A stretch of DNA of 64,000 nt from the NCBI GenBank assembly GCA_010909165.1, contig VJWM01000007.1, positions 372,001-436,000 on the forward strand, in the 5' to 3' direction. Made by a program: the position numbers and the translations under genes. Of the stretch, positions 34,075 to 40,606 are shown piece after piece (within the stretch, counting starts at the first letter, position 1; each line of letters begins with the position of its first letter). Under the pieces are notes generated by a model. That model worked only from the letters and a program-made list of their open reading frames with translations. It searched no databases and had not been told where the DNA came from. The stretch is from Anthoceros angustus. Its lineage: Eukaryota; Plantae; Anthocerotophyta.

Positions 34075-37000
34075 CTACGTACCAACCGATGCAGGAGAAG
34101 GTCCGTCCACCATGTGCCAGTCCGGCTGTGGCAGTTGCATACGCTCACAATACGCGCCCTCCTGAAGCGGAAGTGAGCAAGCACTGTTTCTTGGTGACAC
34201 AACGTCATGATCCACTTCAGTCTGCGAGACAGAAGGCAGAGTTCCGGATTCATTGAACATATGGGGGCCACCGGACCTACTAAGTCCAAAGGCAGACTCT
34301 AGCCTTGCTAAACCCATCGAACTTGAGAAAGACGTTGTTGCCCAATTCTGTTGGTATAGCGTATCTGAGGACCCAAAACCTGCATTGCTATCCCTGGCTG
34401 AGGGCATCTCGCCAGGAATTGGACAGTGTGCCATGGCGGCCGCTGCAGGCAAAATAGAGGACCCATGAGGGAAAAACGACATCCCAGGTGCTGAACCTTC
34501 GCCATGATAATGCTCTCCAACATGGTCCGCAAAGCCAAAAAGCGCAGGGGCGTCGTCACCAAGGGCTCCACTTCCCGTCCCAAGTGCTGGAGAGGAGACC
34601 ACCACTTCTTCATGACTCTCTGACCCGCATCCCATCGTAACTGGAGAATTCGATACCCATAGATCCGTTGCCACAAACCCTGACCGCAATGCAGCAGAAT
34701 CAAACGATAAGGGTACACTGGACAGAACAGGCTTCCTATCAACAGCTTCATTCACCGCGTCTCGGTCACTCGATGCCGGCTCGTCACTCTCTGTGGACAT
34801 GTCTATTACAGGATATAGCAGCGAAGGGCTACTAGAAGTGACTCCTGTTGATGAGATTCTCGCCATGGAAGTATATGGAGCCGCATCTACTTTGTCCGGC
34901 GGCGCCGGCTCCCATGATCCATCCGGAAATACCATAACATCCACAACATTTTCCGTGGTATTCTTAAGCACCTACAATCAGCATACAGGCTTTGATCAAT
35001 GAACCACACAAGACAGGGAAAATGGGTGACTGCAGTGATGGAAAGCCAGTCGTTGCCCTCTACCTTTGCCATCTGTACGTCAAGCCGGAGATCTGGAAAG
35101 CTAACAGGTGTGGTGCAGTATGGACAGCGCCAGGCAGGCCTCCTCTTGTTGATTTCAACAAAACTCTCGTAGTCAAAACACTGCCAACTGCAAGTCAGCT
35201 ATATGAAGACAGAGACTCCTGCAATAACAGCGACTGAAACAATGAACAGTTCCATACCTGATGATGTTTGCATGAAGCTCCTTTAACAGGAGTGCTTATA
35301 CGCTTATGACTGTCAAATCGAAGGACAGCGTTAACATTTTTGACACGAGCATCATGGAACAGGGGCTATGCAGTCACTTGCAATTCCGCTGACAGCAGAA
35401 GAGAGTTTGCCACTAACTACATATGCAGGCAGCAAACGAAGTTCACCTGATTGGACAGCGTAAAGACACTCTCGAAGCGCCCTCAATGACATCTTCATCG
35501 TCAATTGCAACAGTGCTGCTTGCTGCCACACATGCACACAGTTTCCGAAGGTTGAGAAGAGTTCAGGAATCCTTGGCTGCTCGGACAGCATAAATGAACC
35601 ATGCGTTGTAACGAACCATTACCTGTCACGGCTTCGGGCAATGGCATGGCGTATTCTGGAAGCTTAAACGTTCTTCCCGATTTAAGCGTTGTCGTGATGG
35701 CAATAGCAATTGTATAAGAATCTGGATCACACATGATAGTTCATAGCTGTATGAGTTTCATATCTTGTCTTGGCACTATCTTATGGAGAGGGCAAAATAA
35801 AAAAACCCACATACCTGGGAAATCACCTATGACTTGCAGCACATTGAGTCCGTGACGAAGGAACTGCGTAACATCAGTGGGCACCTGAGGCCCAGAATCC
35901 TGGAAAAGGACCCGAAAAGAACAGGTTAGAAGGTCAATATGCATTCTTTTCCCCCGTAGAATTCCAGTTTGCAAATTTGGCTAGCAGGGACAGCGATGTA
36001 GATTGCACTGACCGTAGAAATGATCGTCCTCTTTTCCAGACCTCTTCCATTCACCAGAATACTGGACAAAATGTAGTGACAAAGACGAGAACTTAATAGA
36101 CTAACACAATCTTCAAAAGGAAAGACTTTGCATGTTCGAAGTTGCCTCAAAAGAGCCATGACACACCAGGTCCAGCAGAACTACTGACTACCTTCTTCTA
36201 GGGAAACAACAAGGGAAACAAGTTTCCATACTTGACTTGAGGCGGTGAGATGAGGCAAGACGACGTTTCAATGTTCTTGGGAAAGACAAACAGCCTCTGC
36301 CAACAAAGGACGGATTGAATTTAATGGAGAACTTGGACGCCAGAATGCACGACCAATTCATTTTTCATGTTGTAGAGAAACTTGTTATCAAGAGCTCCAA
36401 GCGCCACGAATCAGAGGTACCCATGGCGTACCAGGCGCTCCTGGTTGCTACCAAGCGGCGGCACGTTGAAATCGCAGAGCAAAACCTCGTAACCAAGCTG
36501 ACAGACCAACATAGTGTGCTGTCAGTGTCAAGTTCCCATAATCTGTCTTCATGTGAGTCTACAAAAATTCCAGAAGACAATGGGGAAAGCGAGTGAGCAG
36601 AAACCTTGGCATCTACCGATAAGATGACTGAGCTTACTTTCAACCAAGGAAGGTATCTGCATCAAGCTGATAACTGAGTGACTTCGTGCCTCCTCTCTTG
36701 AGGAGACAGACAAGATGCTGTGCTGACCATCACACATCGTCGACAACATACATAGACCCAAATATCTGGGACGACGCAGCTCTTGCTCTGGCAAAGGCCT
36801 GGGCTGCTTTCCCAGGGCCAAGACACATCTACACCCGGTAAACTGGCGGCCAACGTTTGTCAAAGCCTGCTAAGGACTGTATGCGTACCTGTCACTTATC
36901 CTATTGATGACCTGTGCAGTGTCCTGTGCTTCAGCATTATTGGGTAATTCCGGAGAAGACGGAGAGTGTTTGTCTTCGACAAAGTATGCTGTAAACTGCA

Positions 37001-37671
37001 GAGACAGTGGCACACAAGACTGTCTGTTGCGACTGCAGTGTCCAGTAATGAGCAAGAGCAAACGCAATAGAAGGATGGGACAGGTGCCTCACAGTGTGGT
37101 AGCTAGCCAGTAGCTCCTCCGCATCTGCAGCTTGGAACCACCCAGCAAGGCAGGCACTCTACGCAGCAGTGTGTGAAAGCGCGGTTAATGCGATGCAAAG
37201 CCGTCCTGCACAACGACGAAATGCACAGGCCTAGCATACCTTGAGAGAGAGGAGTAGCGCCATGATCGCTGGTCGTAGACTGACATCTTCCTTGACCTCG
37301 CAGACCTGCAACAAGAAATGTGTGCGCGTGTGAGTTCTGGTAATGTGCGGATGACGGGGAAGCAACCCGGGTAACGATTTCCGGAACCCACCAGCCTGAA
37401 GAGCTGCACAATGTCCGAAGTCACCGATGGCACCAGGCCGCTGGTCACGGCACGATCAACCAGTCTGTGCAGAGGAGAATTGGAGTTAACGTGATGGTGG
37501 GGCACAGTGCAAAGCTGCGGAGGGCGGACGTTAGAAGAGGTACCGAGAGAGGTGGACGAAGTCGCGCTTGAGCTCTGGTTTTTGTGCAACAGGGCCTGGA
37601 ACGAGCTTGGTTAAGAGGGAGGCGACGAGATCCGAGAGTCGGTCGTTAAGCTGCTGCTGTGGTGCTCCCAT
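34075..37671 (-). CDS. PIAL: PIAL1/2-like SP-RING (zf-MIZ) SUMO ligase; 3' end uncertain
   Basis: ILVNGRGLEKRT...DSGPQVPTDVTQFLRHGLNVLQVIG (PINIT-like). SP-RING reads EDVIEGASRVSLRCPI|SHKRISTPVKGASCKHHQ|CFDYESFVEINKRRPAWRCPYC, then VMVFPDGSW and a SIM-like VIDMSTESDE. ATG at 37671. Confidence 0.87.
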
Positions 37672-37787
37672 GGTGGGTGCTATTGCCGAGCGGGCTTCAC
37701 GAAGTGCCGTAGTAACAGATAGGTCTTGAGGCGGGTGGGTGGGCAAGGCAACGACGAAGTGGAGGCTGTCCAGCCCGTCGGTGCAGG

Positions 37788-38895
37788 ATGCCTCCGTATA
37801 AGATGGAGATGGAGTGCACGGCCTACTGCAGGTAGGGATTTCATGGCACGGCAGGGCAGGGCAGGGCCGTTGCTGGGGGAATTTGTGACGTATGTGCTTG
37901 GCCTGGGGTGATGGCAGCTGTGGCTATTGCTGCAAGTGGGAGTGGGGGATCAAGCTGCCAGGAAGTTGGTATCTTGGTGTCTGCCCGTGGTGGATTCCGC
38001 TGAGAATACGGCGGCGTAAGAAGGGTGTGTACACGGACAAACGGGTGCCTTTGGTGGCCAAGTAGGTGCTTTTCTTGCGAAGAATTCGCAGGTGCCTGCA
38101 TGGTGGCATGCTGTTTGATGACCAGATTGTTGTTGCACCCAGGTACTGGACAGCCACAGGACTGACAGGAAGTCCATACTATGGCTTCACATCCAACGGA
38201 AGGTACCCTGGCCAGGTGAGCACACAAGAAAGGGCTTGCAAGAGATGGGATTGGCTTTCCCCTGGCCCAGCTAGCCTGGCTCGGTTTCTGATGACGACAC
38301 TGGCCTGGATGCATTGCAGGCCCGTCCAGCAATACTGTCTGGGCTGAGCTTGTCACAGTACCAGAAGATTCCAGGCCGTTTGTTGCTCTTTCCTTGGCGT
38401 TTACTTCCCAGACACGGTTCTATTGCTGCAGACACCGACTATTATCCTTTCGGCACACGAATGTTCATCCCAGGCTACGGTTGGGGAGAGGTAGGCCTGG
38501 TATCATCTGATGAGGCCGGGAGAGAGGATCTGGCAGGTTGAACAGCCTCTGCTGCCATGTTGTGCAGGTTGAGGACCGAGGGGCTGCCATCAAGGGCCCA
38601 AGAAGGATCGATCTATACCACCACTCGCATCAAACAGCACTGAAATGGGGGCGTCGCAAATTGGAGGCATGTCACTGCCCCTTGTTGTGCTAGACTAGTC
38701 TTAGCCATGTCCTGTCTGGTGGAGGAAGTGTTAATGCTGGTGTGAGCTCATACATGTTGTTCATGAAGTGTTACGGCTTGATTGCAGGTTCTGATTGTGC
38801 TTCCAGGGCAAAGCACTCTAGACTGTCTCCGGATTCCAAGACCACTGAAGGCAGTACTCAAAGGGCTCAACTGGCTGAGATGCTTGCTTCTCTAA
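37788..38895 (+). CDS. 3D-domain (three-Asp, MltA/Sps-like lytic transglycosylase fold) protein, 6 exons, about 214 aa
   Basis: Exons 37788-37831, 37918-38061, 38143-38215, 38320-38490, 38568-38666 and 38788-38895 join in frame. Product: MPPYKMEMECTAYCSCGYCCKW...YYGFTSNG...GSIAADTDYYPFGTRMFIPGYGWGEVEDRGAAIKGPRRIDLYHHSHQTALKWGRRKLEVLIV...*. The last intron needs a GC donor. Confidence 0.88.
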
Positions 38896-38996
38896 GCTAG
38901 GGCTAGGCTAGGCTAGGGGACAAGATGCATAACAGTAATAGTGCTAGGGACATGAAGTAGGTAGGACGTGCTCAGTAGAGAATTGTAGAGCTCAAT

Positions 38997-39718
38997 TCAT
39001 GTGGATATGAGGGATTTGGCTGGCGGTAAAGGAGGTAGTCGATTGATGAGAGAAGCTTGTCTAGCCAGTTCCTTGCTTTCCGCAATAACGCTGGATGTGA
39101 GCGGGTGCGTGGCGGAGGGCGCGAACTGTGAGTGCGGGAGGGAGCTGGCCAGCGCCAGGCGCGCAGGCACGATGTTCTGCCACCACAACTCGCTCAGCAG
39201 CCTGAAGATGAGGAGCCAGTATCGGCGGTCTCGTTCAATGGAGAAGAGCGCGGAGCCGTACTCGGGCGTGTACACCCACAGGTGCAGCCAGGGGCGATCC
39301 AGGATCTCTAGCAGACCCTGCGCCTGCGGCATGTAGTAGAAGGGCACGTTGAACCAGGGCGGCTTCTGGTACGGGCACTTCACCTCCAGAATGCCGCTGT
39401 CCTGGAGCAGGCCGTCCGGGGACGCTCCCAGCCAGTCGAGCAGGGGGTCGCCGGCCTTGTACACGCAGAAGCCTAAGCTGCGGTTCACCTGCTGGCCGGT
39501 GGCAGCCTCATAGTGCGCCACCCGCCCGGCTCGTGGAGGCTGCCCCACGCCATGGCCGCGTTGGCTTCACCTGGAACCGAGGCCCCGAGCACCTTCTCCC
39601 GCCACAGGGTCGCGCGCCCGTCCCTCCACATGCCCAGCGCCGACCCGAAGGCGCTGGCCGTGATCCGATCCCGCCGCACAGCGTGCCATTCCGCGCTGCC
39701 CTGTTCCATGTTCATCAT
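38997..39718 (-). CDS. YqaJ-like (lambda-exonuclease/PD-(D/E)XK) nuclease, intronless, interrupted by a 1-nt frameshift at 39522-39526 (pseudogene or sequence error)
   Basis: One frame gives MEQGSAEWHAVRRDRITASAFGSALG...LWREK...AMAWGSLHEP. The other continues VAHYEAATG...WLGASPDGLL...GILEVKCPY...PFYYMPQAQGLLEILDRPWLHLWVYTP. Only 5 nt separate the CCG(P) and GTG(V) codons. Confidence 0.85.
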
Positions 39719-40606
39719 GTCTAGGCAGACGGAATTGGTTGGAGTCAGTCAAGTATGGAATCACCAAGCAACTGGCATCACATGGAGGAGTGGACGAAAA
39801 GCACCTTTGCCTGTGCAGAGCGGTCGAACCAGCCGCCACCGCGGGCATGCTGCAAGCACCATGGCATTGGATTGCCAAGCTGCGAGCGAGCCTGCACTTC
39901 CTTCTATCCGCTGTCCCCACTCAGACAAGCTTTGTTTCCAACGATGCCTGCAAAAAGGGATGGCACAGTCGAACAGCCTCGCTCAACGCAGTTCGATCGC
40001 TTCGTCGAGCCCTAGTGTGAAGCGCACAACTGTCACAAATCCAGACCTAATCACGAATCTTAATTATGTAGCACCATGCAAAACGGTAGAGTTTACTTGA
40101 AAGCAGGGAGAGGGCTGGAAAGATGAGATAAAGAGGGGTATTGTAATACCCATTGGATTTGGCAACAAAGGATCTGCCTTCAACAAAACAGGGTGTTCGG
40201 AGGTGTCCTAAGTCTGTCAATGTTGTTCGGTTTAAGAACCTATGTTATTGCAGCACCTGAAGTATAGCGAACTCTCGGAAACTCAAATCGGACAGGAAGC
40301 CCGTCACCAACCGGACGGGATTTGCTAAGCCCTACAATTCTCTGAGACAAAGTACTTCCCTTTGGCAAAACAAAATATCTTCGGCATGACCTGGCTTTGG
40401 AGATCGCAATGAAAAATTGTCTAGACAATACCCTCCATACCCTCCACAGCATATAGCGAGAACAAAGTACAATCACCAGACGATGGGCACTCCACCCCAA
40501 GGCGCTTATTCGCATGTAATACCACAATTACCCACGCGATCAATGGCCTGGGGAGGTGTGTAATATAGACAGGCAATAGCCTGTGAAGCGTGGGTAGATC
40601 AAGCAG

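What the first reader, a model, noticed from the sequence alone, without database searches (positions are those of the whole stretch)
37788..38895. Intron-containing plant gene encoding a bacterial 3D-domain (MltA-like) peptidoglycan lytic transglycosylase
Seen in sequence: six exons, fragmented in the ORF track, splice in phase into a ~214-aa protein with the full 3D signature. It has the N-terminal TAY strand, GxTxxG, and all three Asp motifs: IAAD, VEDRGAAIKG and RIDLY...ALKWGRR. Established: 3D domains (Pfam 3D; MltA, YocH/Sps proteins) cleave bacterial peptidoglycan, and the D of the DxGxAIKG motif is catalytic. Mosses retain a plastid peptidoglycan wall needed for chloroplast division, and lycophytes retain the Mur genes. 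Inference: this is a domesticated bacterial-derived gene rather than contamination, since it has five spliceosomal introns and ordinary plant genes on both sides. It could be an uncharacterised plastid-peptidoglycan remodelling enzyme, an antibacterial muralytic enzyme, or a DPBB-fold glycan-modifying protein.
Basis: partly seen in the sequence, partly recalled or inferred. Interest (0 to 1): 0.9.

Follow-up and report, generated by a model that had tools for sequence, protein, structure and literature searches.

The report
Plant gene for bacterial wall cutter
This plant, probably a hornwort, has a real, spliced and expressed gene for an enzyme built like those bacteria use to cut their cell wall; green plants have inherited it since before green algae and land plants split, so it is an untested candidate for trimming the bacterial-type wall layer that still surrounds chloroplasts in mosses, ferns and conifers.

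Summary
Six + strand exons between 37788 and 38895 join in frame to 639 nt, giving 212 aa rather than ~214. Four introns are GT-AG and one is GC-AG. All five are skipped exactly in spliced contigs from two public runs of two organisms and two studies. Exon 5 alone passes Pfam's 3D threshold and exon 4 matches the start of the same profile.

Orthologues of about 210 aa occur across green plants, from Prasinoderma, prasinophytes and streptophyte algae to gymnosperms. Among angiosperms only Tasmannia and a degenerate Colocasia copy were found. All five intron positions and phases are shared with Marchantia and Chara, and three with a chlorophyte. The gene is therefore ancient and vertically inherited, not contamination.

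The nearest bacteria are Desulfobacterota lipoproteins at 46-52% identity, not cyanobacteria. The fold matches YuiC and MltA, and the three Asp and the Thr of the first strand are conserved.

One detail is wrong. By the YuiC/MltA structures the catalytic Asp is the RIDLY one, not the EDRG one.

The distribution resembles that of the complete plastid peptidoglycan pathway. However, the protein has no transit or signal peptide and no hydrophobic segment, so its site of action is unresolved and its function is untested. No paper on the plant family was found.

The parts
37678..37787 (+). 5' untranslated region (minimum extent), holding an in-frame stop at 37713
   Evidence: The X8 contig starts at 37678 and the X1 contig is continuous from 37544. 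There is an in-frame stop 75 nt upstream of the ATG and no upstream in-frame ATG.
37788..37831 (+). Exon 1: start codon, 14 codons plus 2 nt. Holds the TAY strand; Thr11 is codon 37818-37820.
   Evidence: The joint 37831|37918 is seen in X1 and X8. Thr is nearly invariant in 47 sequences.
37918..38061 (+). Exon 2: Cys cluster (C-x-C-x2-C-C) and the eukaryote-specific aromatic and polybasic insert
   Evidence: The insert is absent from the bacterial rows of alignment A1. The joint is seen.
38143..38215 (+). Exon 3: G-x-T-x-x-G motif (G-F-T-S-N-G)
   Evidence: The G, T and G are invariant or nearly so in A1. The joints are seen.
38320..38490 (+). Exon 4: helical middle part and the first Asp (IAAD; Asp125 is codon 38431-38433)
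   Evidence: This exon is 86% identical to residues 88-144 of the 212-aa Sphagnum orthologue.
38568..38666 (+). Exon 5: second Asp (VEDRG; Asp147, 38574-38576; sugar-binding by homology) and third Asp (RIDLY; Asp159, 38610-38612; catalytic by homology)
   Evidence: Pfam 3D scores 33.6 bits. Residue roles come from YuiC D151 and D162.
38667..38787 (+). Intron 5, 121 nt, with a GC-AG boundary
   Evidence: A 121-nt skip is seen in X1 and X8, with 3 ambiguous letters that allow the GC..AG cut.
38788..38895 (+). Exon 6: last strand of the domain plus the eukaryote-specific cationic C-terminal helix, then the stop codon
   Evidence: A helix is predicted at 194-210 in the model of P0084. Net charge is +3 and the hydrophobic moment is 0.40.
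38896..38989 (+). 3' untranslated region (minimum extent). It overlaps the end of the convergent minus-strand YqaJ-like gene.
   Evidence: The X8 contig runs to 38989, and the X1 contig continues into the minus-strand gene.

Best explanation
The locus is an expressed six-exon nuclear gene for a 212-aa single-domain protein of the MltA/YuiC ('3D', double-psi beta-barrel) family of peptidoglycan lytic transglycosylases. It belongs to one orthologous group that an ancestor of green plants took from bacteria. Today's nearest bacterial relatives are lipoproteins of Desulfobacterota, and the group has been inherited vertically ever since.

Shown here: the gene model, its splicing, purifying selection, family membership, fold, conservation of the active-site residues, old introns and the taxonomic spread.

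Inferred: the protein is still an enzyme that cuts beta-1,4 MurNAc-GlcNAc (or GlcNAc-GlcNAc) bonds. [quoted passage not shown] Its most likely substrate is the peptidoglycan layer between the chloroplast envelope membranes, because the gene is kept in the lineages that keep the full peptidoglycan pathway and is lost where that pathway is lost.

The bacterial lipid anchor has been replaced in streptophytes by an aromatic and polybasic loop plus a cationic C-terminal helix. In prasinophytes and Prasinoderma it has been replaced by two glycine-zipper hydrophobic segments. I read all of these as alternative membrane tethers. How a protein without a transit peptide would reach the intermembrane space is not explained.
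For: Gene and expression:
- The model is in frame.
- Five exact joints are seen in two runs, organisms and studies.
- Of 13 listed exonic differences between the window and the X8 transcript, 12 are synonymous.

Family and fold:
- Exons 4 and 5 match Pfam 3D.
- Orthologue P0084 scores 56.5 bits.
- YuiC is the best solved relative by sequence, at E 1.4e-11.
- By fold, YuiC gives Z 12.0 (rmsd 2.2 A over 85 residues) and MltA proteins give Z 8.7-11.3.
- The model has pLDDT 87.5.

Active site:
- D124, D146 and D158 are invariant and T11 is nearly invariant in 47 sequences.
- Their roles are taken from PMC4499186.

Age:
- Orthologues were found from Prasinoderma to gymnosperms.
- All five intron positions and phases are shared with Marchantia and Chara, and three with Myrmecia.
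- In the tree, bacteria lie on one side of a 99% branch, and seed plants, ferns, mosses and liverworts form starred clades.

Distribution:
- The complete pathway is reported in Prasinoderma, streptophyte algae, bryophytes including hornworts, ferns and gymnosperms.
- It is reported lost in core chlorophytes and most seed plants (PMC7455551; PMC8964177; PMC12681378).
- A Pyramimonas relative carries a LysM domain.
Against: - There is no N-terminal transit or signal peptide. The ATG lies 9 codons before the domain, an in-frame stop lies 75 nt upstream, and the same short N-terminus occurs in about 25 green-plant orthologues.
- There is no hydrophobic segment.
- The profile match is qualitative. 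Many genes unrelated to peptidoglycan are also lost in angiosperms.
- Asparagus and Citrus, reported to keep most Mur genes, gave no hit.
- Cyanophora gave no hit.
- The amphipathy of the C-terminal helix is not above shuffled controls (11% of shuffles reach it).
- No activity, localisation or phenotype data exist in the papers I could search.
Confidence: 0.55

Rival explanations
1. The protein keeps the 3D fold but has been repurposed for a job outside the plastid wall. It might bind or cut another GlcNAc-containing glycan in the cytosol, at a membrane surface or in the nucleus, or act as a non-enzymatic binding protein.
For: - It has no targeting peptide of any kind and no hydrophobic segment.
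- A conserved polybasic stretch (R/K x5-6), new in eukaryotes, could be a nuclear or membrane-surface signal.
- YuiC also cuts GlcNAc oligomers and MltA binds them, so the fold is not strictly specific for muramic acid.
- Expansins, loosenins and kiwellins share the barrel at Z 7-8 without acting on peptidoglycan.
Against: - The full catalytic set is invariant over more than a billion years of green-plant evolution, which a mere binding role would not require.
- The loss pattern follows the peptidoglycan pathway.
- A related algal form carries LysM.
Confidence: 0.3
2. It is an antibacterial muralytic defence enzyme directed at foreign bacteria.
For: The fold and active site are those of a wall-cutting enzyme. 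Land plants and algae live with bacteria, and hornworts host cyanobacteria.
Against: - There is no secretion signal, so it would not reach extracellular bacteria by the classical route.
- It is single-copy, slowly evolving and under purifying selection (12 of 13 differences synonymous), unlike typical fast-evolving defence genes.
- It was lost in nearly all angiosperms, which still face bacteria.
Confidence: 0.08
3. It is bacterial contamination, a recent transfer or a pseudogene mistaken for a gene.
For: The domain is overwhelmingly bacterial, and the nearest non-plant relatives are bacterial.
Against: - It has five spliceosomal introns confirmed by spliced contigs.
- Plant genes lie on both sides of the same contig: an At4g14310-type propeller, a TOG/HEAT protein, and neighbours with CT..AC introns.
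- Intron positions are shared with Marchantia, Chara and a chlorophyte.
- The frame is intact and selection is purifying.
- Identity to the nearest bacteria is only 46-52%.
Confidence: 0.01

Closest known systems
YuiC (SpsC group stationary-phase survival protein) of Bacillus subtilis, PDB 4WJT/4WLK/4WLI
   Same: It is a minimal single-domain 3D/double-psi beta-barrel enzyme and the best sequence and fold match here (E 1.4e-11; Z 12.0). It shares the three Asp and the Thr of the first strand, and the G-x-T-x-x-G and D-x-G-x-A-I-K-G motifs. YuiC yields a 1,6-anhydro product (PMC4499186).
   Different: YuiC is secreted with a signal peptide and forms a domain-swapped dimer. It lacks the roughly 100-residue middle part with the Cys cluster, the polybasic loop and the C-terminal cationic helix. 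Only about 85 of 211 residues superpose.
MltA (membrane-bound lytic murein transglycosylase A; E. coli, Neisseria and others)
   Same: It has the same barrel and active-site geometry (Z 8.7-11.3). Its catalytic D308 corresponds to RIDLY, D297 to EDRG and D261 to IAAD. It is lipid-anchored, like the Desulfobacterota relatives.
   Different: MltA is about 340-400 aa, with a different inserted second domain and a periplasmic location. The plant protein has no lipobox or signal peptide.
Desulfobacterota '3D domain-containing' lipoproteins (for example Desulforhopalus, Desulfopila, Desulfosalsimonas)
   Same: These are the nearest non-plant relatives, at 46-52% identity over nearly the whole domain. 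They share the Cys cluster and middle part.
   Different: They have a lipoprotein signal peptide, no polybasic insert and no C-terminal helix. They are uncharacterised, and their neighbours (mutL, trmFO-like) say nothing about function.
Known plastid peptidoglycan hydrolases of green plants and glaucophytes (DipM; moss MltB and VanY homologues)
   Same: They are nuclear genes of bacterial type proposed or shown to remodel the plastid wall during division (PMC4015805). The moss MltB/VanY work is cited from memory and from reference lists seen; the paper itself was not readable.
   Different: They belong to different folds and families (LysM-M23, SLT-type, VanY). No paper found here names a 3D/MltA-type member.
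Aphid rlpA genes (bacterial double-psi beta-barrel wall genes acquired by an animal)
   Same: A bacterial barrel-type wall-acting gene was domesticated in a eukaryotic nucleus and linked to control of a bacterial-derived partner (PMC9116674, listed).
   Different: It is a different barrel family (RlpA), a much younger transfer, and the target is a living symbiont rather than an organelle.

Membership tests
Pfam 3D (PF06725) / MltA-YuiC type lytic transglycosylases | Profile match above the curated threshold | tested here: met
   Exon 5 alone scores 33.6 bits against a cut-off of 23.8. Exon 4 adds 14.5 bits on the collinear start of the profile. Orthologue P0084 scores 56.5 bits.
Pfam 3D (PF06725) / MltA-YuiC type lytic transglycosylases | Three conserved Asp, including the catalytic third one (MltA D308 / YuiC D162) | tested here: met
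   The window has IAAD, VEDRG and RIDLY. These Asp are invariant in 47 sequences, and they align residue by residue to YuiC with roles.
Pfam 3D (PF06725) / MltA-YuiC type lytic transglycosylases | Thr of the first strand that orients the catalytic Asp (MltA T99 / YuiC T91) | tested here: inconclusive
   Thr11 of TAY is nearly invariant. The structural alignment starts at model residue 1 against YuiC residue 81, which would put Thr11 opposite T91. No residue-level superposition was available.
Pfam 3D (PF06725) / MltA-YuiC type lytic transglycosylases | Double-psi beta-barrel fold | tested here: met
   The model of P0084 has pLDDT 87.5. It matches YuiC at Z 12.0 and MltA proteins at Z 8.7-11.3, above expansins at Z 8 or less.
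Pfam 3D (PF06725) / MltA-YuiC type lytic transglycosylases | Export to the wall compartment (signal peptide or lipoprotein signal) | tested here: not met
   Bacterial relatives have lipoboxes. The plant proteins start 9 residues before the domain and have no 19-residue window with hydropathy above 1.0.
Pfam 3D (PF06725) / MltA-YuiC type lytic transglycosylases | Formation of 1,6-anhydro-muropeptides | not testable with these tools
   This needs an enzyme assay.
Plastid peptidoglycan machinery of green plants | Co-occurrence with the complete Mur/PBP gene set | tested here: inconclusive
   The gene is present in Prasinoderma, streptophyte algae, bryophytes, lycophytes, ferns and gymnosperms. 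Among angiosperms only Tasmannia and a degenerate Colocasia copy were found, and no named core-chlorophyte models other than Myrmecia. Pathway distribution comes from PMC7455551, PMC12681378 and PMC8964177. The comparison is qualitative and not corrected for phylogeny. Asparagus, Citrus and Cyanophora gave no hit.
Plastid peptidoglycan machinery of green plants | Plastid targeting sequence | tested here: not met
   There is no N-terminal extension in the window or in about 25 orthologues. Only the degenerate Colocasia copy has a Ser/Pro-rich leader.
Plastid peptidoglycan machinery of green plants | Chloroplast-division phenotype on loss | not testable with these tools
   This needs knock-outs.
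Plant expansin / barwin / kiwellin type barrel proteins | Secretory signal, family-specific Cys pattern, closest fold match | tested here: not met
   There is no signal peptide. No Pfam hit to these families appears at E up to 10 on the exons. Fold scores (Z 5.6-8.2) are below those for YuiC and MltA.

The most novel reading that the evidence does not exclude
Green plants have a missing 'space-maker' for the plastid wall. It would be a transit-peptide-less MltA-type lytic transglycosylase that reaches the chloroplast intermembrane space, or acts from the envelope surface, by a non-canonical route. Its tether would be a polybasic loop and C-terminal helix instead of the bacterial lipid anchor, and it would be needed for chloroplast division wherever the peptidoglycan layer persists. 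It would also be a peptidoglycan-pathway gene acquired from a non-cyanobacterial donor.
Probability: 0.3. Interest if true: 0.75.

Novelty: new variant of a known kind. Interest (0 to 1): 0.55.

Why it matters
Work on the chloroplast peptidoglycan layer has identified the synthesis genes and a few hydrolases. I found no paper that names an MltA/3D-type glycan cutter in plants.

This family is single-domain and slowly evolving. It is present from the earliest-branching green algae to conifers and lost in almost all flowering plants, which is the pattern expected of a core wall-remodelling enzyme.

It gives moss and liverwort laboratories a concrete gene to knock out, for example the Marchantia orthologue MPTK1_1g05360. 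It also names a specific residue to mutate: the Asp of RIDLY, not of EDRG.

The protein also poses a targeting puzzle, because it looks like an envelope or intermembrane enzyme but has no leader sequence. If it turns out not to act on the plastid wall, it would instead be a clear case of a bacterial wall enzyme kept for a new job over a very long time.

Tried and rejected
- **Joined protein.** Exons were searched by reference, and P0084 (93% identical on exon 4, 91% on exon 5) stood in for whole-protein work.
- **NCBIfam on exons.** This gave only weak partial matches to SpsC and Ent wall-binding proteins, far below the cut-offs.
- **Bacterial gene neighbourhood in 78 Desulfobacterota loci.** The conserved neighbours are mutL upstream and a GIDA/TrmFO-like or MFS gene downstream, which say nothing about function.
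- **C-terminal helix as an amphipathic membrane anchor.** The hydrophobic moment is 0.40, but 11% of shuffles reach it, so this is not significant.
- **Cyanobacterial or glaucophyte origin.** No cyanobacterial or Cyanophora member appeared in the top 80 genome loci or in three protein searches. This is not an exhaustive test.
- **Direction of transfer and donor.** The tree has no outgroup and used the quick method, so neither was established.
- **Literature.** Ten searches found no paper on plant 3D/MltA proteins. The moss MurJ/MltB/VanY paper is not held.
- **Organism identity.** I did not test it. 'Probable hornwort' comes from earlier notes of this scan.
- **Run X21.** No contig could be laid, which is no evidence of absence.

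Full report
**Observation**

I read 37400-39300 and located the splice junctions exactly.
- The six + strand exons are 37788-37831, 37918-38061, 38143-38215, 38320-38490, 38568-38666 and 38788-38895. They add up to 639 nt, which is 212 codons and a stop.
- Introns are 86, 81, 104, 77 and 121 nt. The first four are GT-AG and the fifth is GC-AG.
Each exon was searched by reference, and the closest full-length orthologue (P0084, 211 aa) served as a proxy for whole-protein work. The joined step is therefore left out of this report.

**Is it more than chance?**
- Exon 5 alone scores 33.6 bits on Pfam 3D (PF06725; cut-off 23.8; E 4.6e-08) over profile positions 34-64. Exon 4 matches positions 2-20, so the two are collinear.
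- A library-wide search with exon 4 alone found a 212-aa protein (Sphagnum). It matches at 86% identity over residues 88-144, exactly where exon 4 sits in my model.

**Transcription and splicing**
- Public runs were found and four were laid on 36500-40500.
- All five introns are skipped, with the predicted lengths, in a contig of run X1 and in a contig of run X8. X1 is identical to the window (organism A, study P1). X8 is 92-99% alike (organism D, study P4). The fifth joint has 3 ambiguous letters that allow the GC..AG cut.
- Run X2 (organism B) holds an unspliced contig, which could be DNA or precursor RNA. Contigs cannot give expression level.
- Of the 13 exonic differences listed between X8 and the window, 12 are synonymous. 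The one replacement is Tyr to His at 38180, a position that also varies among orthologues. The frame is therefore under purifying selection.

**Context**
- Neighbours on both sides are minus-strand genes with CT..AC introns.
- One is a YqaJ-like domain gene at 38997-39957.
- An At4g14310-type propeller gene lies at about 31.9-33.3 kb.
- A TOG/HEAT (CLASP-like) gene lies at about 46.7 kb.
- This is plant nuclear DNA, not a bacterial contaminant. Earlier notes of this scan call the genome a probable hornwort. I did not test that.

**Relatives**

Full-length orthologues of about 200-215 aa at 60-76% identity to the Sphagnum protein were found in these groups:
- mosses, liverworts and lycophytes;
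- ferns (Ceratopteris, Adiantum, Pteridium);
- gymnosperms (Picea, Araucaria, Cryptomeria, and a Ginkgo fragment);
- streptophyte algae (Mesostigma, Klebsormidium, Chara, Closterium, Spirogloea, Mesotaenium);
- the trebouxiophyte Myrmecia bisecta.

A more divergent group occurs in Pyramimonas, Pycnococcus/Pseudoscourfieldia and Prasinoderma. Among angiosperms only Tasmannia and Colocasia were found. The Colocasia copy is degenerate and lacks the central part.

Databases label these proteins only as '3D domain-containing' or 'uncharacterized'. Ten literature searches found no paper on them.

**Age and origin**
- I mapped the annotated proteins of Marchantia, Chara, Klebsormidium and Myrmecia onto their own genomic loci.
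- Marchantia and Chara share all five intron positions and phases with the window. Klebsormidium shares the last three; its model is N-terminally short. The chlorophyte Myrmecia shares three of five.
- The introns, and hence the nuclear gene, therefore predate the split of chlorophytes and streptophytes.
- A quick maximum-likelihood tree was built from 75 rows. It left out fragmentary or mis-predicted proteins and 60 of the 80 bacterial loci.
- The tree puts all 31 bacterial rows on one side of a 99% branch. It recovers seed plants, ferns, mosses and liverworts as well-supported clades. It has no outgroup, and several algal rows sit on long branches.
- The 80 best bacterial genome loci are nearly all labelled Desulfobacterota or 'delta proteobacteria', at 46-52% identity. 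The exceptions are three with vaguer labels (uncultured bacterium, Pseudomonadota, Proteobacteria) and one labelled as an archaeal MAG. None is cyanobacterial.
- A non-cyanobacterial source does not argue against a plastid role. Most moss peptidoglycan genes are reported to be of mixed, non-cyanobacterial origin (PMC9434261).

**Structure and active site**
- The AlphaFold model of P0084, built with a 47-row alignment, has mean pLDDT 87.5.
- Its best structural matches are YuiC (Z 12.0, rmsd 2.2 A, 85 residues, 34% identity) and MltA proteins (Z 8.7-11.3). Expansin-type barrels score about Z 8 or less. YuiC is also the only solved relative by sequence.
- In the alignment the three Asp are invariant and the Thr of TAY is nearly so.
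- According to the YuiC paper (PMC4499186), the catalytic carboxylate is the third Asp (YuiC D162 = MltA D308). [quoted passage not shown]

**What differs from bacteria**
- The bacterial relatives carry lipoprotein signal peptides.
- The streptophyte proteins have no N-terminal extension at all. In the window an in-frame stop lies 75 nt upstream of the ATG, with no ATG between. They also have no hydrophobic segment.
- Streptophyte proteins gained an aromatic and polybasic insert of about 30 residues after the Cys cluster, and a cationic C-terminal helix of about 30 residues.
- The prasinophyte/Prasinoderma group has two glycine-zipper hydrophobic segments at the same insert site. One Pyramimonas transcript adds a LysM domain (22.6 bits, cut-off 20.9).
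- I read these features as three alternative membrane tethers. This is inference only, and the helix's amphipathy is not significant.

**Function**
- Conservation of the whole catalytic set argues that this is still an enzyme of the lytic transglycosylase type.
- The lineages that keep the gene are those reported to keep all ten core peptidoglycan genes: Prasinoderma, streptophyte algae, bryophytes including hornworts, ferns and gymnosperms. It is missing where the pathway was lost, namely core chlorophytes such as the usual models and nearly all angiosperms (PMC7455551; PMC8964177; PMC10784329; PMC12681378).
- This supports a role on the plastid wall, but the comparison is qualitative. Many unrelated genes share an 'angiosperm-lost' pattern. 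Asparagus, Citrus and Cyanophora gave no hits.
- The lack of any leader is a real difficulty for a protein that should act between the envelope membranes.
- I put the plastid-wall reading at roughly 0.4-0.55, a repurposed non-plastid role at about 0.3, a defence enzyme below 0.1, and contamination or pseudogene at about 0.01.

**Verdict**
The gene, family and domestication are right. One catalytic detail is wrong. The plastid role is plausible but unproven and is challenged by the missing targeting signal.
- The kind is known: a 3D/MltA-like enzyme, with orthologues auto-annotated in databases.
- The green-plant subfamily has its own architecture and appears undescribed in the literature, so I rate it a new variant of a known kind, of moderate interest.

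Noticed in passing
window 36889-39957: One 2174-nt contig of run X1 runs through three genes: a minus-strand gene with CT..AC introns (36656-37544), the 3D gene, and the minus-strand YqaJ-like gene. The 5' ends of the first pair and the 3' ends of the second pair must therefore overlap as transcripts, which makes this a very compact locus with a head-to-head promoter region of about 240 nt.
   Followed up: partly
window 38997-39957 (-): The convergent neighbour encodes a YqaJ-like viral recombinase/exonuclease domain (Pfam PF09588, 28.5 bits). It has at least one intron (39721-39804) and is transcribed. This is another phage/bacterial-type domain in a plant gene, right next to the 3D gene.
   Followed up: partly
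window 38667-38787; L081 (Marchantia) intron 4: The window's intron 5 uses a GC donor, confirmed by spliced contigs. The Marchantia orthologue instead uses a GC donor at intron 4, so rare GC-AG introns arose independently in this small gene.
   Followed up: yes
P0041, P0307/P0020, P0063, P0240, P0032 (algal relatives): Prasinophytes and Prasinoderma carry a divergent form with two glycine-zipper hydrophobic segments inserted where streptophytes have the polybasic loop. Prasinoderma has two such genes, and one Pyramimonas transcript adds a C-terminal LysM domain.
   Followed up: partly
P0060 (Colocasia), P0109, P0098 (Tasmannia): The few angiosperm copies look eroded. Colocasia and a related unnamed protein lack about 35 central residues and the C-terminal helix but have a Ser/Pro-rich N-terminal leader. 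Tasmannia isoform X2 ends differently. These may be relics on the way to loss, or a re-targeted form.
   Followed up: no
L040: A copy typical of Desulfobacterota sits in a genome bin labelled Candidatus Methanocomedens, an archaeon that lives in consortia with sulfate reducers. This is probably a binning error rather than an archaeal gene.
   Followed up: no
window 37854-37870 (intron 1): Intron 1 holds a short GGCAGG-type repeat. The related organism in run X2 has a 20-nt insertion there and a 9-nt deletion in intron 3, while the exons stay in frame.
   Followed up: no
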